Shown one piece after another: positions 6,427 through 23,660 of a stretch of 64,000 bases of DNA. A program made the position numbers and the translations under genes. The notes beneath the pieces are model-generated. The model saw only the letters and a list, made by a program, of their open reading frames with translations, was not told the origin of the DNA and did not search any database. The first letter of the stretch is position 1. Each line of letters starts with the position of its first letter. The stretch covers positions 1,596,287 through 1,660,286 of the forward strand of contig JAWQFM010000008.1 of NCBI GenBank assembly GCA_033442325.1, in the 5' to 3' direction. The DNA is from Salpingoeca rosetta. Lineage: Eukaryota > Protista > Choanoflagellata.

Positions 6427-7161
6427 CTAGTTGCCGACCGATGCTGCCGGTGCCCAGGGCTGGTAGTCGCTGACAGCCTTGCGAGCCTCGTCGGTGAATG
6501 GGCCGTCGATGCGGATGGAGATGGCGGGCGTGTCTGGGTCGAGGCAGACCGCCTGGTGCTCGTAGCGCGGGTCAAACCAGCCTGCATGGCCCGTGCAGCG
6601 CTGCGGCTGGGCCGAGGAGTCCTCGGAGAAGACCTGGATGGTCTTTGCGGTGCCGGCGCGCAGCCAGAGGAACTCGTTCAGTACGTCCGGGATGGTGTGA
6701 TCGCGGTGCCTGATGCCGTCCTTACCAGAGCGGTCGATGATAACCCAGATGCGGCCCATCTCCTTGAGCACCTTGCCGATGACTTGCTCCTCAATGAACG
6801 CCTTGAACTTGGGGAACTTGTTAAAGAGGGGCGCGTCCTCCCACATGTCGCTGCGGCTGCGGTTCTGGTGCTCCATGGCGCCCTTTGCCGTGGGCATGCG
6901 CAGGTACAGCCCAAACGTGGAGTCGCTCACGTTGCCGGACGTCTCGAACCGCTTGACGGCAGCGCCGTCCACGTGCGTCTCCGGGTCCTTGGACTCGGTC
7001 ACAACCCCGTGCGGGTACACGACGCGGCCGGGGTCCGCCTCATCCACGGACCGGTTCAGTGTCTCCACGCCCACGCGCTGAATCTCCTCCACAACCTCCT
7101 GCCACTGCTTCTCATCCACAAACTGGTCCAGGCTCGCAATCATCCTGCCCGTTGTTCCGTA
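6427..7161 (-). CDS. 2OG-Fe(II) oxygenase / Asp-Asn beta-hydroxylase-like (DSBH) protein; main exon, with a possible short first exon at 7659-7591
   Basis: HxD motif (GIRHRDH), EFLWLR, WFDPRYEH (distal His) and SIRIDG. Acceptor CAG at 7164-7162. The catalytic region has no introns. Confidence 0.7.
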   Translation of the reverse strand, partial: YGTTGRMIASLDQFVDEKQWQEVVEEIQRVGVETLNRSVDEADPGRVVYPHGVVTESKDPETHVDGAAVKRFETSGNVSDSTFGLYLRMPTAKGAMEHQNRSRSDMWEDAPLFNKFPKFKAFIEEQVIGKVLKEMGRIWVIIDRSGKDGIRHRDHTIPDVLNEFLWLRAGTAKTIQVFSEDSSAQPQRCTGHAGWFDPRYEHQAVCLDPDTPAISIRIDGPFTDEARKAVSDYQPWAPAASVGN

Positions 7162-7869
7162 CTGCACGCTAATGAGTCGAGAGAACAGAGGAACCCTCGT
7201 TTGCCTTGCTGTGCTTTGGTCTGTGCGGTGCGGCGATGCTGTTTGTCCGAGGGAGGTGGTGGGAGGTGTAGCTTGAACGTCCGTGACCGCGGGCGACACG
7301 CAGAATGAGGTTTGAACTGCGCACGACCGCGGTCTGCGCACCCATCGAATCGCAAAAAGAAAAAAAAAAACGGGATAATCACCAGAGCAAGCAATGAAGG
7401 AGAGAAGGAGAGGCGACAAAGCAAGCAAGCAAGCAGACAACGAATGGCCAGGCACGCGAATCGCATGGCCAGCAAGAGAGCAAGAGGACGACGGCATGGA
7501 ACACGCATCATTGTTATCATATCCGGCGCACGAACAGATGAGCGGAGAGACAATGAAGAGGGCGAAGGCGAGGGCAAGAGCAAGGCGGACGCCAGCACGC
7601 GGGAGACATCCGTTCCGGCGCAGTTCCACGAGTTTGTTGGTTGGAGCGTCCAGAGTCATGGAACGGTGCGAGTCGCAGTCCGTTCAACCAGGTGCGTCGT
7701 GTATGTGTGCGTGTGCATGTGTGTGTGTGTGTGCGTGCGTGTGCGCGCGCGCGCGTGTGCGTGTGTGTGCATGTGCGTGTGTATGCGTGAGCGACGAGTT
7801 TGGGTCCATTCTGATGCCATCGTTCACAACCACAACACAGGGCGTGACTGACTGTCTGACTGACTTAAT

Positions 7870-8055
7870 GCATGGCACCCAAACCGACAACGAGTGGCGT
7901 GGTAACCCCCACAACATACCTTCCTCCTGCCAGCCCAACGGACCGACAGGAAGGATGGCGACCTCATCCGGGTCCAGAAGAACGCGTGAGCCCTCCTGGA
8001 GCACCAGAGTGTGCCGCCAGACCATCCAGGCTAGAGGCCCAGATGGTGCCGATGC
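7870..8055 (-). ncRNA. Candidate Fanzor omegaRNA scaffold
   Basis: Microsatellite-free segment 3' of the Fanzor stop. Consecutive hairpins at 8047-8021, 8015-8000, 8000-7973, 7969-7953 and 7951-7925, plus 5'/3' complementarity (8055-8045 with 7879-7870). Confidence 0.55.
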
Positions 8056-8186
8056 TGTGTAAGGCAAGGTTCATCACACGTGCATGAGACTTGTGTGAGG
8101 GGCGTTAGTGAGGGGATTCTGCTTGAACAAGCAACGGCAGTCATCTGCAACAACCACGACAACAAGAGCAGCAGCACGAAGATGAA

Positions 8187-8218
8187 CGCAGCAGCAGCAG
8201 CAACAACAACAACAACAA

Positions 8219-8274
<56 letters not shown>

Positions 8275-8275
8275 T
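8187..8275. repeat. (CAG/CAA)n trinucleotide tract just 3' of the Fanzor stop
   Basis: Direct reading. Confidence 0.9.
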
Positions 8276-11200
8276 CATCCCACGTTTGCTATGCTCCATT
8301 CGCGACACATGCGGCGCGACACTGTCACCAGCCCGTTATCCATATCAGGACCGTCCGGCTCGGAGGACCCACGCCACGGACCAAGCTCACCGTTTGCCTC
8401 CTCCACCAGGGACCTGCACACCCACAAGGCACGGGCGCATCGATTGCGGTGAGATTGCGGAACAGCACACACACACGTGCACACACGTGCACACATGCAC
8501 TCGCACATGCACATGCACACACACACACACACGTGTGCACACATGCACTCGCACATGCACACACACACACATATATACAATTTACACTCACTCATACGCA
8601 TTTACACACACACACACACACATGCGCTCACGCACAAACTCATGCACTCACATGTACACACATGCACACTCGCATACACACATGCACACACGCATTCACA
8701 CGTGCACACACGCATACACGCATACATATTTACACACACGCATTCACATACACACGCACACGCTCGCCTACATGGAACCATACCTCGCAGCGATAGTCTT
8801 TGCGGCAGCAACGTCTCGGTCAGCAGACGCACCGCAGTGCGTACACGTGGCAATCCTGTCAACCATTTGCGTACACACGTGCATGAGCACACACGCATAT
8901 CCGCACCCTCTTCTCTCATACATGCGCACACACACACAACCACGCATATCCGCACCCTCTTCTCACATACATGCGCACACACACAACCACCCATATCCGC
9001 ACCCTCTTCTCTCATACATGCGCACACACACACACACAACCACGCATACCCGCACCCTCTTCTCACATACATGCGCACGCACACACACAACCACGCATAT
9101 CCGCACCCTCTTCTCACATACATGCGCACGCACACACACAACCACGCATATCCGCACCCTCTTCTCACATACATGCGCACACACACACACACAACCACGC
9201 ATATCCGCACCCTCTTCTCTCATACATGCGCACACACACACACACAACCACGCATATCCGCACCCTCTTCTCACATACATGCGCGCACACACACACACAC
9301 AACCACGCATATCCGCACCCTCTTCTCACATACATGCGCACACACACAACCACGCACATTCATGCACATACCTCGTTTGCTCGTCAATGCGGTTTGGCCA
9401 GGCACAGCAGAGGGAATACTTTGTCGTCCTGAACTCCTCCACAATTTTTGTGTCGACCCGGCAGCCGATGGCGCGGCGTAGCTCCAGGATGGGAGCCTTT
9501 GTCCCTCCGCCGCGACCCTTATGGACGCTGGGAGCAGGAGGCAAGAGAGGCAAGAGGCGAGTTCAGTTGGGCTGTTGTCGGTGCGGCGTGACCGTTGGAT
9601 GTGGGCAAGGGTGCATTGTTGTGCGTGTGTGTGTGTGTGTGTGTGTGTGCGTGCGCGTGCGTGCGTGCGTGTGTGCGTGTGTGCTTACCAGTCTCCGAAG
9701 AACACCCGACAGTCGCGTCCAAAGCGTGTCGCAAGCTCGCCGGCGACTCTGCTTCGGAAGCGACAGTGCTTCAGCTTCTCATGAAGCCTCCACTTCAACT
9801 CTCGCCTGCTCACACCTTCCCTCAAACACTCCCTCGCAGACGCAACCACATCGTCCACGCTCCCTGGCTCCGCACCCCCGCCCTGCTCTTCCCGTTCTCG
9901 CTGCTCCCGCTCTTCCTCTCCCTTGTCCCTGCCTTCCTGCCCCTCTCCCTTGTCCCTGCCTCCCTGCTCCTCCTGCTGCTGTCGTCTCAGCTGCTCCTCC
10001 TTCTCAATCCGTGCCTTCTCTTTCCTGCGCCTGCTCCTCTCCCTCTTCGTCCGCTTGCCCCGCTCCCTCTTCTTCCTGCGTGACCCCGTCTCCCCCTTCC
10101 CCATCGCCCCTCCCTGCTCCCCACCCTCGTCGCTACCCCCTGACCTTGCTGGCACTGTCGCCGTTGGCTTGTGGTGTCGCCGTCCCCGCCCCGTATACAA
10201 CTGGTTCGCTATTCGCTTCTGTGACACCAGCATTTTTTTGCCGTCTTGGATCCGAACGCATGCCAGCGGGATGCGGGTGCCTGGGTCGACCCCAACCACG
10301 GGTGTGATGGGGCTGGTGTCGCAGACGGTGTCGCGGCGCGCGCTGGGCTCCACCAGGAGGTATGCCGTGTAGCCGTCCGTCCTGATGGACGTGACGCGAC
10401 GCTTCCGGAACTGCCTGGCCACGTCTGCTCCGAGGAAATCGAGGAGGGACGGAGCTTGCCTTGGCTGTGGTCGCACTGCGGCAGGCTGTCGGCACTGGCG
10501 CTGGGAGTGGCCGAGGCGGCCACACTTGCAGCAGGTCAGGTACCGTAGTAGTCCTGCATCTAGTTGTATGAAAGGGTGCTTGTTTGTGAATGTGGGGAAT
10601 ATCTTGAACGAGGTCAAGTCGGTGTCGGGCGGTGCAAGGGTCCTCGCAAGATGCTGCGCGGCGCCGATGTAGAGGGCCAGCTCGGCCGTGTGCTCACATG
10701 CGAAGCGCGCGCCTTCGTCATGGTGCTCCGCCACCTTCTTCAGTTGCCGTTGAGCAGCTCTCGCCTTGTTCTTGAGATCCCGTTGGAGGAGCGGGGTGAA
10801 CTCCTTGGACGCCAGGTTCAGCAGCTTGTATGCCTAAGTGGTGAAGATGAGCACGTGCAAACACGCGTGTGAGTTGGTTGTGTGTGCATGTGTATGAGTT
10901 GGTTGTGTGTATCGCGTTGGTCGAGCTGGGACACACACCGCGATGCATGATGTAGCAACAGCAGGCATGGGAGTAGGATCATCAAGCAGACAAGGCAAAC
11001 ACGCAAGCATGCGCACAGACATACCATGGTGGCCGTCATCCATTTCGGTGGGTCCGGTATCCCCACGCCGTGCTGTCGGAGGATTGACAGCATCGGATGC
11101 TGGCTATGTTTTTTGTGGTTGCGCAGTGTGGTGAAGAGGTTGCTTAGCTTGTCTGCTGTCAGCTGTGGCGCCAAGTGCTGGAAGCAGTAGGCAGGTCTTG

Positions 11201-14200
11201 GGGATTTGCCTGTGGCTGCTGCTGTGACTGTTGTTGCAGTGGCGGGCGGTGTTGTTGCTGCGGCTGCTGTTGCTGTGGCTGCTGTTGTTTGCTGCTGCAC
11301 CTTTTGCCCTTTGCACGGGTTGTCAGACGGCGACGCCGCTCGGGACTTCTTGGGGCCCTTCTTCTTCTTTCTTCTTCTTGAGGGTCTTCGACGCCTTCGG
11401 CACGCTCCTGGCCTCGCGGAAGGCGACCTTGCGCTCCACAATTTCCTTTCTTGTGGTCTGGGCGAGTCCGCCAGAGTGGAGAGGATTTCCCGGTGGTGTT
11501 GTTCCGCAGTGCGCAGAATGTGCAGGTAGAGTGCCGTGGTTGCAGTGCACTTCATCTGCCCAGCATACCTGCGTCAAGCGTGGATGTGCGTGACAAGGCA
11601 GGGCGGGTGTGCGCATGCATGAGCGTGTGATTGCGCACGCGGGCACGAACCTCGCATGAAGTGCGAGAGTGGGATGAAGGGTGCATGGTGCAGTGAAGGA
11701 AGCAGTCAGGCAGTTCAGCGCATTGTCGGCCATACCTGCACATCTCCAGCACCTTTGAGCGCTCCAGCTCCACTCCAAGCCGCTTGAAGGGCATCAGGAC
11801 CGCCACCCTGTTGTGCACCAACATCGATAATTGCAGTTGGAAGAGGGCAAAGTGTGAGCGGGCGCAGGGCCAAGCGACAAGGGTTCAGTCACAGGTGCAG
11901 ACGGCAAGCGGTTCACGCAGCACAAACACAACGCATGCAACATAGCGCAGCAGGCAGGCTATGCAAGAGTAAACCTTGGGTTCTTGTTCTGATCTTGACC
12001 GCGTCGCTTCTGGCCACGTTTGCCCCGCTTGGTGCTCTTGCCACAATCGTCACGTCCATTGTGATCGCGAGGCTTGCGCCCTGGACGCCGCGAACGCTAC
12101 GTCACCATACAAAACACGTCACCAGATAGTACATAAGTCTACAGCGCAAAATCTCAGGGTTTCAGGCACAGCAAGCACAGCGCACCACACACGGGCGATG
12201 GCATACGCAACCATGTTGAGACTTACGTGTGATGTTGTCTCAAGTCGACCATTCCGCATGTCGGATACGATGGCTTTGAGAGCCGGGCGAAGCCGCACAC
12301 GGTGGCAGGTGTGGCCCGTGTCAGGGTCTGCACGTCCACGTGCGCGTTCCACGGCATTCTCCACGTGCACCACTCCGGCGACCGTGCGCCCCTAATGTGG
12401 TTGGTTGCAAACATGTCGGTGAGACGTGAGTGTCTTACAGTGGTTGTGCGATACAAATCAAAGCAGGGCCGTACAAGCAGGCGCACGCTCCGCAAGACAT
12501 TGCAACCCCCCACGCAAGGCATTCACGCAAGACACTGCAATATCATACCTCGTTTGCGGGGTCGCTAGTGAACTCAAACAGAGGGGTTGTGGCAGGATGG
12601 GCGCTGTCGCCGTCGTCGTCGGCCGGCTCTGGTGCAAGTGGTGGCAGCCTGCGCCTTGCCTGCGCAGTGTCGTCCCAGACGACCTGGCAGGTAAAGGCAA
12701 GCATGGCATGACGCACCTTTGCGTCGAGGTCGTCGGTTATGATGTAGTTTTGCCTGAGGTGCTGCATGATGTCGGTGTAGGTCTTGTATTTGTGTGTGAC
12801 GTACATCGCCGTGCGCATGCCGATCCCGTGAATGTGCGCACCTGGTGAGCAGGGGAAGGGGCAGCAATGCGTGAGTACTTGGCGCACACGAGCACACGAA
12901 GAGAGAGATAGAGATAGAGAGACAGAGAGAGAGATAGGGGAGGGAGAGACGGAGAGACAGAGAGAGATAGGGGAGGAGGGATGCAAGTACACACGTGCAC
13001 ACAGACAGACACTTGCACGCTTACAAACGCGCATACATGCAAGCATGCACAGACAGACGCGCAGGCATACACACAGGCAAACACGTAAGGCCAAGCACGT
13101 GCATAACTCATACCGGAGTGCTTTGGAAGGTAATCGCAACCGGACAGTACAGCAGCAAGCTGCAGCGTGTCCAGGCGAAGATCGCGAAGCGACAGGCGAA
13201 CGCCGTAGCGCGTTAACGTGAGCTCCTGCAGGTGGTGAAACTGGATCGAATCACAGGTCCTGCCAGGTGTGTGATGTGATGTGAGTGGGGCAAGGCAGCA
13301 GCAGGTCGCGCGCGGTGAGATCAAAACGCTTGTTACAAGGAGCATGGTGGGAAGTCGACGTGGCAAAGGCAGGTCAAATGCACTCAAAGGCACGCCAAGT
13401 GGCACGCACAAGCATGCACAAGCAAGCAAGCGGGACATCAACACGATGGCATCAACACGATGGCTCACCCGGAGCTTCGCAGGTTGCGGAGGACGTGGGG
13501 CACGCCAAAGCACAGCATGTCGCTGTCGTCGCTGAGGACGGCAGCGACACGGCCGGTCCGGGCCATGAAGGCGAGTTGGGCGTCGGCCTCGTAAGGTGCC
13601 ACCACGTACTCTGTGAGGCCAAGCACAAACAAGCACAGCGGGTTCGTGAGGAAGAACGGTCTCCGTGCAAGCCACTCGGACACAAGATGGGGGCGGGACG
13701 GAGGAAGGGGCACAGAGGGCTCACAAAGATGGTCAAGTGTCACTGCCAGCGCGCGCACACACACGTGCACGCACAGCAGGGCAAATCAAGCGATCACATG
13801 CATGCACAGGAGGGCAAATCAAGCGATCACATGCACCAATGTTGAGGCGATCCAGCATGGCCATGAGGGTGCGTTGCATGTCACGGCTGACGTGCAATGC
13901 CCTTCTGCTGGCCTTTCTTGCTTCGTGGACTTTTCCTTGCTTGCGGAGCTTGAGCGCCTCCTCTCTCGCGGCCCTGTAACATCCACAATCCATGACAAAG
14001 AACGGTGCGTGAGCGTGACAAGCGTTGGCTGCAGGGCGGTTGCAGCTCTGCTCTTGAGCAATCACAGGCAGGTGTTCTTACTTTCGTTGGCGCTGACGGC
14101 GCGCGTTTTCCTCTGCTTTGGCGGCGAGGGGAGCGCCATCAAACACCACGACAGGTGTGATTCCGGCTGTCGTCAGGAGGGCGAGCCTCTTGAAGACAAA

Positions 14201-14655
14201 TCTGCAGCGTTGACACGCATGTCACAGAGTGAGTAGTAGAAGCACGGAAGCAGCAGGCAGCACAATGTGGCAGGGCTGGCATGCATGTACAGGCGTGGGG
14301 TGATGGTGTGTGTCGTACCTGTAAGGACGTAAGTCCTCGGCGTTGCGCAGCAGTTCCAAGGACCTGGAATAGCATCCTGTCAAGTGCATCGATGTGAGTA
14401 GATAGAAAGGAGGAAGGGAAGGGAAGGGTGTTCGAGATCATGTTTGAGGGCGATCCAGGAGGGCGACGCAATCAAGCAGGCAGAGCAATCAAGCAGGCAG
14501 AGCAACCAAGCAGGCAGAGCAACCAAGCAGGCAAACCCCTTACCCTTATAGGCAAAGGATGATATGTCAATGGCCACGCGTTGGCCAGTGAACCTTTCAA
14601 GGTTCACTGTCTGTACCACGGGGCGTACCAGGTTGATCAGTCCTGGTACGCCCAT
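8275..14655 (-). CDS. EXO1/XPG-family 5' nuclease fused to a Fanzor (TnpB-like RuvC RNA-guided nuclease); 15 exons, ~1140 aa
   Basis: Exons 14655-14544, 14376-14319, 14201-14082, 13973-13837, 13610-13469, 13259-13114, 12841-12549, 12391-12227, 12096-11975, 11807-11736, 11568-11025, 10833-9689, 9527-9372, 8855-8784 and 8413-8275. All introns are GT..AG, phases match and the total is 3423 nt. EXO1 motifs: [45 protein letters not shown]. Fanzor motifs: LYLHILR, FKIFP..FIQLD, SIRTDGY, VGVDPG (RuvC-I), [14 protein letters not shown] (RuvC-II), [14 protein letters not shown] (Zn finger plus RuvC-III). Confidence 0.88.
8890..9360. repeat. Intronic minisatellite, ~44-50-bp unit, ~10 copies
   Basis: ACCACGCATATCCGCACCCTCTTCTCACATACATGCGCAC(AC)n repeated within Fanzor intron 13. 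Confidence 0.95.
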
Positions 14656-15328
14656 GTCTCACACACACACACACACACAGGCAACAACGCAAGCACACGC
14701 GAAAACACGTGCGCAAGCGACCCAGACCCAGGCGTAAAACTGCTGAGTCAGCAAAAATGGAGAAGCGAGCACAATTTCGTGAGGACAACGATGATGAACG
14801 CAGCCGCGCGGCGCAACGGGTAAGCGAAAACAAGATTGGAGATGGGCAAGGGCGAGAGGGGAGGTGGGACAAGGGCGAGGAGAGAGGAGAGAGGAGAGAT
14901 GGGAGATGGGAGACGGAGACAAGGCCCCGTGCCGTCACAAAAGACGATGGCCGCAGAACACCGATGGGGTGCCAACGAACAGCAAACATCTGCAAGGTAT
15001 GCTGTTACAGGAAGGGGAGGGGGAAGAGGACATGGATGGATATTGGGATATTGGGCAAAGGCGTACCTTTTGTTGATGCTTGGGTGAGGCGGGGAGGGGG
15101 GAGGCGAGTGCGGAAGAAGAAACCGGGCGCTGCTGGAGATAGCTGAGGAGAGGGTGACGGGGGGGGGAAGCGAGAGAAGGAGAGAGGAAGATGGTGAGTC
15201 GAGGATGCATGATGCTGTCAGCGTACAGATGTGCGGGCGGTGCTCATGCGCTCTTTCACACACTCACACCACGCACACGCAGGCAAACAGGTGCACAACC
15301 ATGCCTGGCAGTCATCCTCACTCTCTCA

Positions 15329-15364
<36 letters not shown>

Positions 15365-15393
15365 GGCAAACAGGTGCACAATCATGCCTGGCG

Positions 15394-15468
<75 letters not shown>

Positions 15469-15627
15469 GGTGCACAGTACAGGTGCACAATGACGACGGC
15501 GTCATCCTCACTTACACGCAGGCGCAGACGAGCGGGAAAATGAATGTGGCACAAGTGAGTGAGTGTGTTTGTTGTGTTGCAGTCTGTGCGATCGTTCGCA
15601 CACGCACGTGTGTCTGCAATTGTATGT

Positions 15628-15847
15628 GTGTTTCGTCTCCCAGCCCCAGTTATGCAACAAGCACGTGCGTGTTTCGTCTCCCCCCCCCACAGTTATGCAA
15701 CAAGCACGTGCGTGTTTCGTCTCTCCCCCCCCCCCAGTTATGCAACAAGCACGTGCGTGTTTCGTCTCCCCCTCCCCCAGTTATGCAACAAGCACGTGCG
15801 TGTTTCGTCTCCCCCTCCCCCAGTTATGCAACAAGCACGTGCGTGTT
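15628..15847. repeat. Intronic minisatellite, ~42-bp unit x5
   Basis: GTTATGCAACAAGCACGTGCGTGTTTCGTCTCCCC.. repeated. Confidence 0.95.
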
Positions 15848-16433
15848 TAGCGCCACGCAACACACACACACACACACAATCACACACACACACACACACA
15901 CACAATCACAGGTGCCACGCCGAGAAGTTGGCACGGCACGAGTAGCTCTGCGGTTCCGTGAGCGGCCAGCGGGCGGTTGCGCTGGACATTGTGTGCATGT
16001 ACGAGCAGCCGCGATGGCTGACGGTTGAGGAGTCGCGGGAGCTGCTGGAGAAGGAGGCGGTGGCGCTGTCGCACACAAAGGCGAAGAAGGCGCGGAGAAA
16101 GGCACGCAAGGAGGCAGAGCAGGAAGAGGATGATAAGGATGGTGATGAGGATGGCGAGGACGATAAGGCTGAGGAGAAGGACTCCAAGAAGACAGGGAAG
16201 AAGAAAAACAAGGGCAAGGCAAAGGGCAACAAGGGCAAGGGCAACAAGCACGGCAAAGACACCACCAGCACCGACGACGACGATGCGAATGGCGATGATG
16301 ACGAAGACAAGAAGAGCGAAGGCGACGTGCTGGAAGTGAGCACGACGCAACTCGACGGCCCCTGTGACATCATGCACCTCCTGCGAACAGCAGAGGCGCT
16401 TCCCCTCACCCTTCACGCCCACAGGTGAGCTCA

Positions 16434-16483
<50 letters not shown>

Positions 16484-17907
16484 GTGCTGATGAGCGTGTT
16501 GTCGTCTTGTGAGCGTCCGAGTTTGCTCTGCTTGTGTTATTGTCCTGACATCCACACCACCCTCACTCTTTCATGGCCAACTTCTTCGTCGCAATCCATG
16601 ATCTCCTTCACCCTCTCTTCTTGCTCACTCCACCTCCCTTCCTTCATCTGCAACAGAGACAAGCGGCTTCAGATTATGCGCGCGTCCTCGGGCAAGTACC
16701 TGAGCCGCACCCCCGACATGCTGCTCCGCCTGACCATGGCATACCTGCTTGGCCTGCACCACGTCAACCTCACGCTGCTGTGGGCCGACGCGAAGAAGGC
16801 GCTTGGCGAGTTTGCCCGCTACCGCCCGCTAGTGCTGTGGACGCTCTTTGAGGACAAGTTCATGCGCGTGCTTGACGCGAGCGTGGAGATGGGCGAGATC
16901 ATGACGGAGCAGGCGCGCACCATTGGCCAGCAGCAGGTGACAGACTCGGCACACCGCATCGTCGACGACCGCTTGGACGTGCTGTCGTTCCGGTGTCTGG
17001 TGCACCCGCTGGAGCATCGCATCAACCTTCTGCAGAAGCCGGACTGGGACAACAACATGACGCAGGTTGCAGACCGGTTTGTCAACGCCGTGTGCCCGCA
17101 ACCGCGCGTTGATGTGCTCAAGCTGATGCAAACCTTTGCCGAGCTCGCCAACACCTGGCCCCTCCTCACCGAGCAAAAGCACAGGTGCGTTGGTATGCTT
17201 GTTGTAGGTGCGTGCGTGCGCGTGCGTGTGTGTGTGTGAGATCGCATGTGCGCGTGTGCGTGTGTTTGTGAGATCGCCTGTGCAAACCACCCTGCCTGCG
17301 TTTGTGCCTGCGAGACTGGTGCATTTGGTTTGATGTGTACCTGGGATCAGTGCCATTGCTGCTCAACAGAGGGCTGCGCTTGAACGTTGTTGTATTGTAT
17401 CCCCATTTCCCATCTCCGCTCGTCTCCATGCTCATGGCCATCCCTCCGTCCACCTCAACAGACGCTGGTTGAGAAGTTCCTCCAGCTGCACGACGACTAC
17501 CTGGTGGTTGAAGAGGGAGCAGGAAAACTGCAGGACATTTCCGTCGCAAACGCCGGCCTCGCGGGTGCGTTCACGCGCTGCTGTCGTGTCTTTTATTTTG
17601 CTCCAACATGTTATGTGATCTTGCTTCCACCTGCTGTGGCGATTGCAGTGTGGTAATATGACACCTGTTGTTTGCACGGGTTGCTGTGCCGACCCCAGCG
17701 CTTGTGCTCAATTCTTACCGTCGACTCCTCGCTTCACAATCTGCATGTTGTCGTGCGTGCCTGCAGGCATTTCGATGCAGTCGCTCGGCATTGAGGATCT
17801 TGGCGGCGACCTCGACAATCTCAGTGACGATGAGAGCGTCAGCAATGACGACGACGAGGAGGACAATGATGACCGGCGCCGGAAGCGCAGCGCGATGCAG
17901 CACGACG

Positions 17908-18050
17908 GCCGTGGTGGTCGTGGTGGTCGTGGTGGTCGTGGTCGTGGTGGTCGTGGTCGTGGTGGTCGTGGCCGTGGCCGTGGTCGTGGTCGTGGTCGTG
18001 GTCGTGGCCGTGGTCGTGGCCGTGGTCGTGGTCGTGGCCGTGGTGGTCGT
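17908..18050 (+). repeat. Coding (GGT CGT)n repeat encoding an RG/RGG tract
   Basis: GRGGRGGRGRG.. inside a UTP20-like exon. Confidence 0.85.
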
Positions 18051-18543
18051 GATAGCAAGCGCCCAAAGCGGGAGGATGACACTTCTAACGACAACCCTGA
18101 CGATGATGACACGAAGCGCGATGGTGCCGACGCCACCAACGATGGCGACGATGCTGTGCAGGCGTATGATCCAACGGCGGCTGCGCGTCGTCGCGTGTTC
18201 TGGCGGCGGCGGCGGTTCTGGCGGCGGCGGCGGCAGAAGCGCGGAAAGGTCGCGCTGAGCCAGATGGAGGCCATGCTCTCTGATGGAAGCCATGCTCTCT
18301 GTGCTCGCCAGCTTCAACAACGGGAAGGCGCTGATGGAGTGGGAGCGCCTGCAGGCGATTGTGCACAACTTCCTGCACCACTCTGACGCGAACATCCGCG
18401 CCAACGCCCTCAAGGCAAGCGCTTCGTTCAGCCGCGTGGTGCGCAAGTACCTGGAGCCCATGATGGCTGTCAACACGGAGATGGGGCCCCAGCTCACAGA
18501 GCGCTTGAAGACATTCAGCGTCGCCTCCCCAGCCGGTGTGTGT

Positions 18544-18649
<106 letters not shown>

Positions 18650-18891
18650 GTGTGAACCTTGTAGCATTTTTTTCGTGATTCCGTTCACACTCGCTGTACA
18701 ACACTTACCCCCATACGATTCACCGCCACCCCTTTCTACACGTGTGCAGTCGTAGCACCGGAGCATGTTGAAGAGGTGACAACCGTGTTCTTCCGGCTGC
18801 TACAGGCCAAGATGTTTGCGCGCAAGGGCAAGTCCCAGAAGTACTCGCCCAAGTTCCAGCGCGCCCTCATTCTCCGCTACTTGGCCGACTG

Positions 18892-19071
18892 NNNNNNNNN
18901 NNNNNNNNNNNNNNNNNNNNNNNNNNNNNNNNNNNNNNNNNNNNNNNNNNNNNNNNNNNNNNNNNNNNNNNNNNNNNNNNNNNNNNNNNNNNNNNNNNNN
19001 NNNNNNNNNNNNNNNNNNNNNNNNNNNNNNNNNNNNNNNNNNNNNNNNNNNNNNNNNNNNNNNNNNNNNNN
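18892..19071. other. Assembly gap
   Basis: Run of N. Confidence 1.
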
Positions 19072-20256
19072 CCAAGGGGGGGAGTTTCAAAAGCTCCTGG
19101 TGGTGGGGGGGTTTTTTTGTTTTTGGGAAAACGCGTGTGGGCCCACGTGTGTGTTTGTGTGAACATGTGTGTGTGTTGGTGTGCACGTGTGTGTTTGTGT
19201 GAACATGTGTGTGTGTGCGTTTGTGTTTGTTTGCGTCCGCACTCGTCACAGGTGTTTGTGCCGTGAATTGTGTTGTCGTGTGACCATTCCTTAACCCTAT
19301 GTTGCCCGTTGCCCTGATCTTCCCTTTCCACCACACTTCTCAACACCCCCCCCCACCCGTCACAGGTTTCCTGATGCTTGCCGAGTCGCTGCTGAAGGTG
19401 TTTGACACGCGTCTGCAGCCGCACCTGCCGATGATGGTGGCCATCATGGTGCAGATGGCGCGCGAGGCCCACGCTCTGCTCGCCGTCGTGATGAGGTCGC
19501 CCCGCGCTACATCCGTGAACTCAGGATGATCCGCAAGCTCAGCATCCGCCGCCTCTGCAGCCTCTACAACTTCTTCAACGCGGTGCGTGGCGTGTGTGCG
19601 TGTGTGCGTGTGTGCGTGTGTGTGTATGTATGTGTGTGTAATAGGAGGGTGCACCGGAATTGGAGACATGCACGTGCGTCAATCAACCACACACGTGTAT
19701 GCGGATCATGTGTTCGTCCGTCATTGCGCCTGCTCTGTCCTTCTTCCTACTGTGCACGTGTGCAGAAATTGCTGGAGCCGTTTGCGAGCGCGGTGCACGA
19801 GCACGTGATTGGGCCGCAGGTGGCGTCGCTGTATCACGAATGCTCAAACGCCGTCGTCCCCATCCTCCAACTCCTCATGTGAGCACACACCGCTGGGTGT
19901 TGATGAGGGCTACGCGCATTGGGGGTGTGGTTTCGGCCTCGTTTGTTGTTTGTGTTTTGATTCGCCTCCCTCCCATTTTGCCTCACGCAACGTGGCAAAC
20001 CTGCCCCAAAATCCATGAATGCACAACCGTTCTCCCCTGACCACTCCTGTTTGTGATCCCTCTCAATACTCCTGTCCTTCTGCAGCACGTGGAGCGGGGA
20101 TCCGAAAATGCACCGCATGAACAACACGGGACGATGGAGCGGTGGGACCAGCCCGAGGACATTCAAGAGCTGGGGAAATCGGTTCGTGCTCTGGTGTACT
20201 GTCACGTTGAGACGCCCGAAAGCCGGGAGGGGGGGGGGGGTAGTGGGGGGTGTTGT

Positions 20257-20324
<68 letters not shown>

Positions 20325-20701
20325 CTCGCGCTCTCTCCTTCATCACCCACCCACTTGTCTCTTTGTTCAGACGCACGACTTGATCCGCGGCATTATCGGG
20401 GCGAAGCACATATCCAGCGCCATGAGCGAAGAGAAGCACAAGGTCTGGCCGTATTGTTCTGCTCTTGCGCTTTGTCTTTGGGCTGTATTTGAGAGAGGAA
20501 AGGGTCATGGTGTGAGGGCGCATAGCACAGCCCTTTGTTGGGACTCACATCAATCACATGTCTGATGCATCGACCATGTTGTTGAAATCGTTTAGGTGTC
20601 GGCCAAGCGTGCTGTCAGACACCAGCGCGAGCAACAAGAGCTCATCACAAACCCGAAAAAGGTGTGTGTGTATTGTGTGTGTGTGCGTGTGTGTGTGTAT
20701 G

Positions 20702-20801
20702 NNNNNNNNNNNNNNNNNNNNNNNNNNNNNNNNNNNNNNNNNNNNNNNNNNNNNNNNNNNNNNNNNNNNNNNNNNNNNNNNNNNNNNNNNNNNNNNNNNN
20801 N
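20702..20801. other. Assembly gap
   Basis: Run of N. Confidence 1.
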
Positions 20802-21218
20802 GTGTGTGTGTGTGTGTGCGTTCGCGTCTTCATCAGAGGCACAGGGGGTTGGCCCGACTGTACTGTGCACGCCCCTTTTGTTTTGCGTTGCACGATACCG
20901 CGCCAGCCAGTTGCTCACCCCACCATTCTCCTTTATTTACTCCAGGCGCTGCGGCGCAAAGCGCGATCGCACGAGCTCAAGCGGGATGCGCGCCGGCGCA
21001 AGAACGCGGGCATTGGCGGCATGCCCATCAACCCCGTGGAGCTCAAGAAGCTGCACAACAAGCGGCGCGAGCACAACCGGAAGCTCAACCTCATGGACGA
21101 ATAGCCCCTTCCTTGGCGCTGTGTGTGTGTGTGTGCGTGTGCGTGTTGTGTTCTGTTCTGTTTGTCGCAGAACGACTTGTAAACAAACACCAACAGTGTT
21201 GTCAACACCGACACGCGG

Positions 21219-21278
<60 letters not shown>

Positions 21279-21393
21279 CACTCGATTTTTGGCAACGAGT
21301 CGCGCCTGGCCTCCCTTTCTGCTTTCATGATTCCCAGACTTAACTCAAGGCATATGCGAAGAGCAAGGGTGCGTGCAGGCGAGCAAGCAGACG

Positions 21394-21452
<59 letters not shown>

Positions 21453-21459
21453 AAACATT

Positions 21460-23037
<1,578 letters not shown>

Positions 23038-23660
23038 GTCTTGTCGTGCCCGCTTTGGTGAGTTGGTGGCAGCTCGCCTTCATCCTTTCATCGTCGTCGC
23101 TCAACACCTCGAAATTAGGCAAAAACATCATCGCCCATCGTGGATGATGGTGGTTGAAATTTCCTTTATTTTGCCGACGATTTGCACGAAAGATGCAACT
23201 TGACAGCGGTTGCTTGGGGCGTGTGCGTCACCCTTGCACCCCAAACCAGCGCAGATGCATGTGCAAGGCCGGCGTGGTGCTGCCGGGCAGCCTGCACACG
23301 ACTCAAATCCAACCACAAACGAGAAAAATAAAACCCTACCATTTCGTGCGTCACGTCCGTGATGAAAGTGCAAAGGTACAACAACAACAGCAGCGTGCTT
23401 TCCCCTCTCCTTCGCTTGTTGCGCTGTGGGAGAAACGAGGGTGTAGAATTGTAACGCACAACACTGCAAATTTTCTACAACGGAGTGGTTGGTGTCGGCA
23501 AAAGCAAAGAAGTGAAGCAGAAGAAGCAACGGACGACATCCATCCACAGAGCAAAGAGCGAGCGAGTGCTTGTTGACACACGACCGCCGCCCAACGCTAA
23601 AGAACAACAGCACCACCACCACCACCACCTTCGACAGGAACAGCCCCTACAACATACGCC

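What the first reader, a model, noticed from the sequence alone, without database searches (positions are those of the whole stretch)
7865..8060. Candidate omegaRNA immediately downstream of the Fanzor
Read on the minus strand, this ~185-nt repeat-free segment is almost entirely consecutive stems with many G-U pairs. Examples: ACCAUCUGGGC/GCCUGGAUGGU (8047-8021), GGCAC/GUGCU (8015-8000), UCCAGGAGGG/UUCUUCUGGA (8000-7973), GGAUG/CAUCC (7969-7953) and UCCUGUCGGUCC/GGGCUGGCAGGA (7951-7925). The 5' end GCAUcGGCACC can also pair with the 3' end GGUGCCAUGC. G-U pairs that work on the Fanzor strand suggest structure at the RNA level. Established: Fanzor/TnpB omegaRNAs lie 3' of the ORF and run past the element end, with flanking sequence acting as the guide. 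Inference: the scaffold ends near ..GCCAUGCAUUAA (7865) and the following ~15-20 nt (GUCAGUCAGACAGUC..) would be the guide.
Basis: partly seen in the sequence, partly recalled or inferred. Interest (0 to 1): 0.82.

Follow-up and report, generated by a model that had tools for sequence, protein, structure and literature searches.

The report
Structured RNA in Fanzor transposon tail
A 150-200-nt stretch downstream of a Fanzor nuclease gene in the choanoflagellate Salpingoeca rosetta folds unusually well as RNA on the gene's strand only. It does not sit at the transposon end, and the proposed guide is not flank sequence, so calling it the nuclease's guide RNA remains unproven.

Summary
Window 8060-7865 (minus strand) folds at -99 kcal/mol with z -5.3. 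The plus strand gives z -1.0 and DNA parameters give z -1.3. The fold has 72 pairs, 13 of them G-U.

The neighbouring gene is a real Fanzor1-like gene, S. rosetta PTSG_12014, with four exons. Its stop codon is at 8770-8768, so the fold lies about 710 nt downstream, past microsatellites, not immediately after the gene.

- All readable copies (C8, C1, C12) stay about 99% identical through 7865 and through the proposed guide, which is a (GTCA)n-like tract.
- Homology stops sharply only at 7284/7283. That is the right end of a roughly 16-kb transposon, and seven genomic copies of this end share it. It carries a terminal hairpin (7334-7285).
- Under the Fanzor/TnpB rule the scaffold-guide junction belongs there.

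There was nothing to test covariation on. A covariance model found only the three copies, paralogous Fanzor loci lack the fold, and the protein has no close relatives.

Verdict: a genuine strand-specific structured RNA module in the Fanzor tail. It may be omegaRNA-related, but the proposed scaffold end and guide are refuted. Interest is moderate to low.

The parts
7905..8060 (-). Core of the structured RNA module. It is a multibranch fold with three hairpins, each with an 11-bp apical stem: 8047-8021, 8019-7956 (apex 8000-7973) and 7955-7922.
   Evidence: RNAfold z -5.3 on the minus strand only. Pair list with 13 G-U. One substitution among copies, G-U to A-U, keeps the pair.
7865..7907 (-). 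Weak 3' hairpin (7907-7874) and a tail ending in GCCAUGCAUUAA. The tail can alternatively pair with 8055-8045 to close the whole domain.
   Evidence: MFE. The constrained fold gives -97.2 against -99.0 kcal/mol.
7845..7864 (-). It is conserved inside the element, so it is not flank sequence.
   Evidence: Present in all three readable copies with one T/C change. Elsewhere in the genome only (GTCA)n microsatellites resemble it, at about the control rate.
7698..7793 (.). CA/CG-rich microsatellite between the module and the element end. Its length differs among copies.
   Evidence: Repeat family D2. Indels of 58 and 32 nt against the C1 and C12 copies.
7284..7334 (-). Terminal hairpin and right end of the transposon (...GUCGCCCGCGGUCA). 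This is the canonical position for a Fanzor/TnpB scaffold-guide junction.
   Evidence: Seven genomic copies end here and their flanks diverge immediately. Hairpin fold z -2.3 and -1.7 on the two strands. Three solo fragments of 57-91 nt keep it.
8768..8857 (-). Last Fanzor exon (…[25 protein letters not shown]) and stop codon (8770-8768).
   Evidence: Translation. 100% match to P0001 = PTSG_12014, residues 457-485.
9371..9526 (-). Fanzor exon 3 (…[13 protein letters not shown]…; first half of the zinc ribbon).
9691..10833 (-). Fanzor exon 2. It holds a CCHC zinc knuckle, the RuvC-I motif GVDPGTRIP, an E/K/R-rich insert and the FFGD motif.
11025..11093 (-). First exon of the annotated model PTSG_12014. 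Paralog models start further upstream, at 11555.
8461..8550. After it was left out of every search and masked in scripts.
23340..23362 (-). Approximate left end of the roughly 16-kb repeat unit (…GAC(R)CACGAAATGGTAGGG…). The Fanzor gene and the RNA module lie at the right end of this unit.
   Evidence: Shared boundary with the C10, C12 and C2 copies. The 10-mer TCACGGACGT lies beside both ends in this copy.

Best explanation
The segment is a structured domain of the sense-strand transcript of a Fanzor1-carrying transposon. It lies in the 1.5-kb non-coding tail between the Fanzor stop codon (8768) and the transposon right end (7284).

Shown:
- The fold is RNA-specific and strand-specific.
- It belongs to the element and is found only in copies of this element.
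- It is not at the element boundary.

Inferred:
- It is transcribed with, or just after, the Fanzor mRNA.
- It acts as an accessory or 5' domain of the omegaRNA precursor, for example as a protein-binding or exonuclease-resistant handle, or it is a relic of an older omegaRNA.
- The functional scaffold-guide junction, if the system follows the Fanzor/TnpB rule, is at 7284/7283 beside the terminal hairpin, and the guide is read from copy-specific flank DNA.

It is not a scaffold that ends at 7865 with GUCAGUCAGACAGUC as its guide.
For: Fold: z -5.33 on the minus strand against -1.0 on the plus strand, and only -1.3 with DNA energies. 13 G-U pairs, with no mismatch in the three 11-bp stems. It is the only structural outlier in the tail.

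Gene: PTSG_12014 lies on the same strand. PF07282 scores 25.7 bits, E 1.3e-5. Its nearest non-self relative, P0003 (blastp 3e-10), matches SpuFz1 8gkh at 7e-23.

Element: the module occurs only in the three readable copies of the element. The right end at 7284 is shared by seven copies and has a terminal hairpin.

Literature: Fz1 omegaRNA scaffolds span the right end and run 14-15 nt into variable flank, may lie at a distance from the stop codon, and have one to four stem-loops (PMC10432273; PMC11423790).
Against: - No RNA evidence was obtained.
- Copies are about 99% identical, so there is no covariation and no sign of selective constraint.
- The closest paralog (C2) has an unstructured 3' tail, z -0.7. 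No other Fanzor locus matches the covariance model.
- The module is 580-780 nt from the right end, across a length-variable microsatellite. That is further than any described omegaRNA.
- About 0.5-1% of windows in this locus reach a similar z, so a fortuitous or relic fold is not excluded.
Confidence: 0.35

Rival explanations
1. Fortuitous or relic structure. The fold was inherited from the ancestor of a young repeat family and has no present function.
For: Copies differ by about 1%, so nothing shows maintenance. Comparable z values occur in about 0.5-1% of windows here. There is no homolog in the genome or in paralogous Fanzor loci and no Rfam family.
Against: With 200 shuffles, z is -5.3 at -99 kcal/mol and the ensemble is well defined. 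The G-U asymmetry is strong: 8 G-U and 0 A-C in three perfect 11-bp stems. It lies on the sense strand, in the part of a Fanzor element where its RNA is expected.
Confidence: 0.3
2. One reading: a complete omegaRNA whose scaffold ends at about 7865, with the next 15-20 nt (GUCAGUCAGACAGUC…) as the guide.
For: The structure and strand fit. A multi-stem scaffold resembles GtFz1.
Against: The guide and the 580 nt that follow it are conserved in every readable copy. The conservation drop is at 7284, not 7865. The 'guide' is a (GTCA)n-type simple repeat. The module shows no similarity to either true terminus.
Confidence: 0.06
3. A cis-acting 3'-UTR element of the Fanzor mRNA (stability, localisation or 3'-end processing), or an independent small RNA unrelated to guide function.
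For: It has the same strand and the same transcription-unit geometry, and it is RNA-specific.
Against: No known family matches. The poly(A) site is unknown. The paralog's tail lacks any counterpart.
Confidence: 0.17
4. A single-stranded-DNA signal for transposition: hairpins recognised on one DNA strand, as in IS200/IS605 or Helitron ends.
For: The element has a subterminal hairpin at its right end, and 5'-truncated solo ends exist.
Against: With DNA energies the module is not better than shuffles, z -1.3. It is 580 nt from the end and unrelated in sequence to the termini.
Confidence: 0.05
5. A coding exon, of the Fanzor gene or of an overlapping gene.
For: An open frame spans 8067-7684 on the minus strand and another spans 7394-8062 on the plus strand.
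Against: The annotated protein ends at 8768 with the normal Fanzor C-terminus. Both ORFs run through a microsatellite whose length differs by 58 and 32 nt among copies, which shifts the frame. Neither has a Pfam match.
Confidence: 0.03

Closest known systems
Fanzor1 omegaRNAs (SpuFz1, GtFz1, PpFz1; Saito et al. 2023, PMC10432273; Xu et al. 2024, PMC11423790)
   Same: It lies on the sense strand, 3' of a Fanzor1-type ORF, inside the transposon. It is a string of stem-loops, as in GtFz1, which has four. It need not overlap the stop codon.
   Different: Known scaffolds span the right end or inverted repeat, and their 3' 14-15 nt come from variable flank. This module ends 580 nt before the right end and is followed by conserved element sequence. 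No expression, binding or covariation data exist.
TnpB omegaRNA/reRNA of IS200/IS605 and IS607
   Same: The general logic matches: a nuclease gene followed by a structured RNA near the right end.
   Different: In TnpB the scaffold overlaps the ORF's 3' end and stops exactly at the right end. [quoted passage not shown]
'Ghost' omegaRNA loci of Spizellomyces punctatus (PMC10432273)
   Same: This family also has short solo copies of the right end only (57-91 nt, at C6:377643, C6:749182 and C3:2064238). They keep the terminal hairpin.
   Different: Those fragments contain the terminal hairpin, not the module under review. If anything they point to 7284-7334 as the scaffold.
Fanzor1 genes captured by large DNA transposons, for example Helitron2-type CRe-1/2/3 with terminal hairpins and variable target-site duplications (TSDs) (Bao & Jurka 2013, PMC3627910)
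   Same: The Fanzor1-like gene lies at one end of a large (about 16 kb) element with a subterminal hairpin and a possible 7-10-bp target duplication, without matching terminal inverted repeats.
   Different: No Rep/helicase or any other transposase was found in the element. It carries an XPG-type nuclease gene instead. That paper lists only two Fanzor2 families for this species.

Membership tests
Fanzor/TnpB omegaRNA | Encoded on the nuclease's strand, 3' of or overlapping its ORF, inside the element | tested here: met
   The module at 8060-7865 (-) lies downstream of the stop at 8768 (-) and inside the element, whose right end is at 7284. The distance to the stop is about 710 nt.
Fanzor/TnpB omegaRNA | The scaffold's 3' end coincides with the transposon right end, and the guide is copy-specific flank sequence | tested here: not met
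   Copies stay homologous through 7865 and the proposed guide, down to 7284/7283, where the flanks diverge.
Fanzor/TnpB omegaRNA | Stable, strand-specific RNA secondary structure | tested here: met
   z -5.33 against -1.00 on the opposite strand; DNA energies give z -1.3.
Fanzor/TnpB omegaRNA | Structure conserved, with compensatory changes, among related elements | tested here: inconclusive
   Only three readable copies, 99% identical, with one pair-preserving change. The covariance model finds nothing else in the genome or in five other TnpB-like loci. The protein has no close relatives outside this genome.
Fanzor/TnpB omegaRNA | Expressed as a discrete RNA that binds the nuclease and directs cleavage | not testable with these tools
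Fanzor1 protein (premise of the finding) | RuvC-I D, the [TS][TS]-x-x zinc ribbon and the C-terminal RD motif, with homology to solved Fanzor1 | tested here: met
   The motifs [17 protein letters not shown]…CTHCG and [10 protein letters not shown] are present. PF07282 has E 1.3e-5 at 25.7 bits, just under the 26.3 cut-off. P0001 against P0003 gives 3e-10, and P0003 against SpuFz1 8gkh gives 7e-23. The link to solved Fanzor1 is transitive; there is no direct PDB hit.
Rfam families (ribozymes, snoRNA, miRNA, tRNA-like) | Match to a curated covariance model or a tRNA fold | tested here: not met
   No hit at gathering scores in the 64 kb. Over 7865-8060 the only hit was IRES_Bip at E 0.84 (noise); the stronger hits in the scan fell on the neighbouring microsatellites. 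No tRNA was found.

The most novel reading that the evidence does not exclude
The omegaRNA of this intron-bearing Fanzor may be assembled by splicing.
- The module contains AAG|GUAUGU at 7919, the donor type used by two of the gene's three introns.
- A U11CU5 tract followed by CAG| ends at 7334, just before the terminal hairpin.
- Removing 7919-7334 would place the three hairpins directly next to the terminal hairpin and the flank-derived guide, giving a spliced scaffold of about 190 nt.

A weaker variant is a Fanzor with a fixed internal guide aimed at (GTCA)n microsatellites.
Probability: 0.06. Interest if true: 0.85.

Novelty: new member of a known kind. Interest (0 to 1): 0.35.

Why it matters
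Fanzors are the eukaryotic RNA-guided nucleases. For most families, including those of choanoflagellates, the closest living relatives of animals, the guide RNA has not been defined. Correct placement of the scaffold-guide junction is what makes such a system testable or usable.

This work moves the expected junction of this family from 7865 to the transposon end at 7284. It also shows that the striking fold is an internal tail domain. If that domain proves to be part of the omegaRNA, whether as a long precursor or joined by splicing, it would show how a bacterial-type guide RNA is produced inside a spliced eukaryotic transcription unit. If not, it is an ordinary structured stretch in a transposon's untranslated tail.

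Tried and rejected
RNA evidence
- The look-up of sequencing runs listed three raw RNA-seq runs.
Those places were not sent to any search afterwards and were masked in scripts.

Protein and RNA family searches
- Pfam, NCBIfam and PDB searches of the largest Fanzor exon alone gave only a zinc-knuckle hit.
- Rfam gave nothing.
- The covariance model R1 found only the three source copies genome-wide, and nothing at E<0.1 in the C2, C6, C8, C14, C29 and C10 loci.
- An exhaustive phmmer search of P0001 gave only its paralog and one marine-metagenome Fanzor1 on a 1.5-kb contig with no 3' flank.
- The look-up of encoding contigs had no record for P0001.

Copy comparisons
- My early reading that the C10 copy lacks the module was withdrawn. 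The gap there is a withheld run of N, not a deletion.
- No terminal inverted repeat matches the right end.
- The module has no similarity or complementarity to either terminus.
- The terminal 407 nt as a whole is not unusually structured, z -0.7.
- The tail of the C2 paralog is not structured.
- No transposase domain was found in the 16-kb unit.

Technical
- Two background z-scans timed out. The third, with 12 shuffles per window, is coarse.

Full report
**Setting.** The window is G000:C8:1596287-1660286 of a 55.4-Mb, 68-contig assembly. A word search with the largest minus-strand ORF returned a 100% match to hypothetical protein PTSG_12014 of Salpingoeca rosetta (P0001, 485 aa) and 94% to PTSG_04012 (P0002). 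The genome is therefore that choanoflagellate.

**Observation.** Read on the minus strand, 8060-7865 folds at -99.0 kcal/mol. Two hundred dinucleotide shuffles average -76.7 +/- 4.2 (z -5.33, none as good), and the centroid almost equals the MFE.
- The plus strand gives z -1.00.
- With DNA energies, where G-T pairs count for little, the values fall to z -1.34 and -0.18.
- The MFE has 72 pairs, 13 of them G-U. Three hairpins (8047-8021, 8000-7973, 7950-7926) each have a perfect 11-bp stem, and together they hold 8 G-U and no mismatch.
The other two are replaced by a longer helix.
- A sliding scan of 7100-8900 shows this is the only strong outlier in the region, and only on the minus strand.
- There are no internal repeats, no tRNA and no Rfam family.
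- In a coarse scan of the whole window, about 0.5-1% of 150-nt windows reach a similar z, mostly simple repeats and palindromes.

The fold is real and RNA-specific, but not unique in kind.

**The gene.** P0001 maps to four minus-strand exons: 11093-11025, 10833-9691, 9526-9371 and 8857-8771. The stop codon is at 8770-8768.
- The protein carries GVDPGTRIP (RuvC-I), [17 protein letters not shown]…CTHCG (zinc ribbon) and [10 protein letters not shown] (RuvC-III).
- Pfam PF07282 (Cas12f1-like TNB domain) matches at E 1.3e-5, 25.7 bits against a cut-off of 26.3.
- An exhaustive phmmer search of 1.8 billion representatives found only its paralog and one other protein, P0003, at E 8e-4. Pairwise blastp against P0003 gives 3e-10.
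- P0003 matches the solved Spizellomyces Fanzor1 (8gkh) at 7e-23, and also the Parasitella and Guillardia Fanzor1 structures.

The gene is therefore a divergent Fanzor1-type nuclease gene with host-style introns.

Bao & Jurka (PMC3627910) listed two Fanzor2 families for this strain. Those probably correspond to the stronger TnpB-like loci on C14 and C29. The present family seems not to be among them.

The fold is therefore about 710 nt downstream of the stop, behind CA-rich and CTG/CAG microsatellites, not immediately downstream.

**The decisive comparison.** The module (query 7840-8130) has two other copies, at C1:3213122-3213412 (99%) and C12:269428-269718 (98%). A fourth element copy on C10 is masked by N over this part.
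- Aligning the copies shows four differences in 241 nt.
- One is in a stem and keeps the pair: G-U here, A-U in the others.
- The proposed guide GTCAGTCAGACAG(T/C)CAGTCAC is present in all three.
- Homology continues, apart from microsatellite length changes, to 7284/7283 in C1, C12 and C10. There the four flanks diverge at once.
- The last 57-91 nt of the element also occur as three solo fragments ending at the same base. In all, seven copies share …TGCGTGTCGCCCGCGGTCA.
- This end carries a 17-bp terminal hairpin (7334-7285) that works on both strands.
- The 'guide' is a short (GTCA)n-type repeat. Outside the element only such microsatellites resemble it, at the control rate.

The drop is 580 nt further on.

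**The element.** The repeat unit is large.
- Similarity to the C10 and C12 copies runs from 7284 up to about 23355, where a second sharp boundary (…GAC(R)CACGAAATGGTAGGG…) is shared with C10, C12 and an inverted copy on C2.
- The unit is about 16 kb here and 17.6 kb on C12.
- It also carries an XPG_N/XPG_I nuclease gene on the same strand.
- No transposase domain was found.
- This copy has the 10-mer TCACGGACGT beside both ends. The other copies give no clean duplication, so I leave the target-site question open.

The Fanzor gene sits at the right end of the unit and points towards it. That is the canonical arrangement for a guide RNA read across the right end.

**What is known.** For SpuFz1 the 75-nt scaffold spans the right inverted repeat and transcripts run 14-15 nt into variable flank. 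OmegaRNAs may lie at a distance from the stop codon, and 'ghost' loci keep the RNA without the gene (PMC10432273). Fz1 scaffolds have a conserved SL1 plus one to three further stem-loops and vary widely in length (PMC11423790). By these rules the scaffold-guide junction of this family should be at 7284/7283. The solo right-end fragments are then the nearest analogue of ghost loci.

**What could not be tested.**
- *Covariation.* The copies are about 99% identical. A 158-position, 61-pair covariance model finds only the three copies in the genome and nothing significant in the C2, C6, C8, C14, C29 or C10 loci. The closest paralog's tail is unstructured.

**Interpretation.** I take the segment to be a structured domain of the sense transcript of the Fanzor tail, with confidence 0.35. 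This is the only strongly structured part of the 1.5-kb tail. It is RNA-specific, and it lies where the element's RNA is made. Whether it is an accessory or 5' domain of a long omegaRNA precursor or a relic of an older scaffold cannot be decided here.

Rivals:
- a functionless inherited fold (0.30);
- another 3'-UTR or independent RNA role (0.17);
- a single-stranded-DNA signal (0.05);
- a coding exon (0.03).

One untested idea would rescue a guide-RNA role. The module contains AAG|GTATGT at 7919, the donor type of two of the gene's three introns. A T11CT5 tract followed by CAG| ends at 7334, just before the terminal hairpin. Splicing there would join the three hairpins to the terminal hairpin and the flank. 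This rests on motif matches only.

**Verdict.** It is a new, untested RNA module in a known kind of element, of moderate to low interest unless RNA data link it to the nuclease.

A follow-up elsewhere in this scan (s1-433381) reached a similar 'misplaced omegaRNA' verdict for a different S. rosetta Fanzor locus. I did not test that locus.

Noticed in passing
window 7284-23355 (minus orientation); copies at C12:268833-~286400 and C10:1410687-~1428200: A repeat unit of about 16-17.6 kb with sharp ends shared by at least three loci. It carries an XPG_N/XPG_I (FEN1/EXO1-type) nuclease gene (14655-13465, minus strand) upstream of the Fanzor1-like gene. No transposase domain or matching terminal inverted repeats were detected. 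The window copy has TCACGGACGT beside both ends.
   Followed up: partly
G000 C6:377643-377734, C6:749182-749261, C3:2064238-2064294 (L031-L033): Solo fragments of 57-91 nt of the element's right end, 98-99% identical. They end at the same base and keep the terminal hairpin. They are reminiscent of the 'ghost' omegaRNA loci of S. punctatus, or of 5'-truncated insertions.
   Followed up: partly
window 10470-10430 (minus strand; P0001 residues 123-137): The Fanzor1-like protein has a retroviral-type CCHC zinc knuckle (C-x2-C-x4-H-x4-C) in its N-terminal half, and an E/K/R-rich insert of about 110 residues after RuvC-I. Neither is known to me from described Fanzors (from memory, not checked).
   Followed up: no
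window 11555-11100 (minus): In the N-terminal exon the window copy differs from the C1, C10 and C12 copies by two compensating frameshifts (…[12 protein letters not shown]… here, …[16 protein letters not shown]… in the others). The C1 copy appears to read in a different frame right after the C-terminal DRD motif (its reading starts at a withheld N-run; not aligned at DNA level). So not all copies encode the same protein.
   Followed up: no
window 7919 and 7334 (minus strand): A donor-like AAG|GTATGT lies inside the RNA module. An acceptor-like T11CT5…CAG| lies just before the terminal hairpin. Together they would define a 586-nt intron joining the module to the right end.
   Followed up: partly
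G000 C14:437439-437645, C29:224083-224289, C2:2277755-2277907, C6:2025739-2025876, C8:355057-355161: Five further TnpB/Fanzor-type zinc-ribbon loci in the genome. C14 and C29 are strong, at 56-57 bits with uninterrupted ORFs of 400-500 aa. C2 is the closest paralog of the window's gene and lacks the intron in the zinc ribbon.
   Followed up: partly
window 14601-14750: The strongest high-energy structural outlier in the coarse z-scan: z -6.2 on the minus strand and -3.9 on the plus strand, -66 kcal/mol. It is probably a DNA-level inverted repeat near the start of the XPG-like gene.
   Followed up: no
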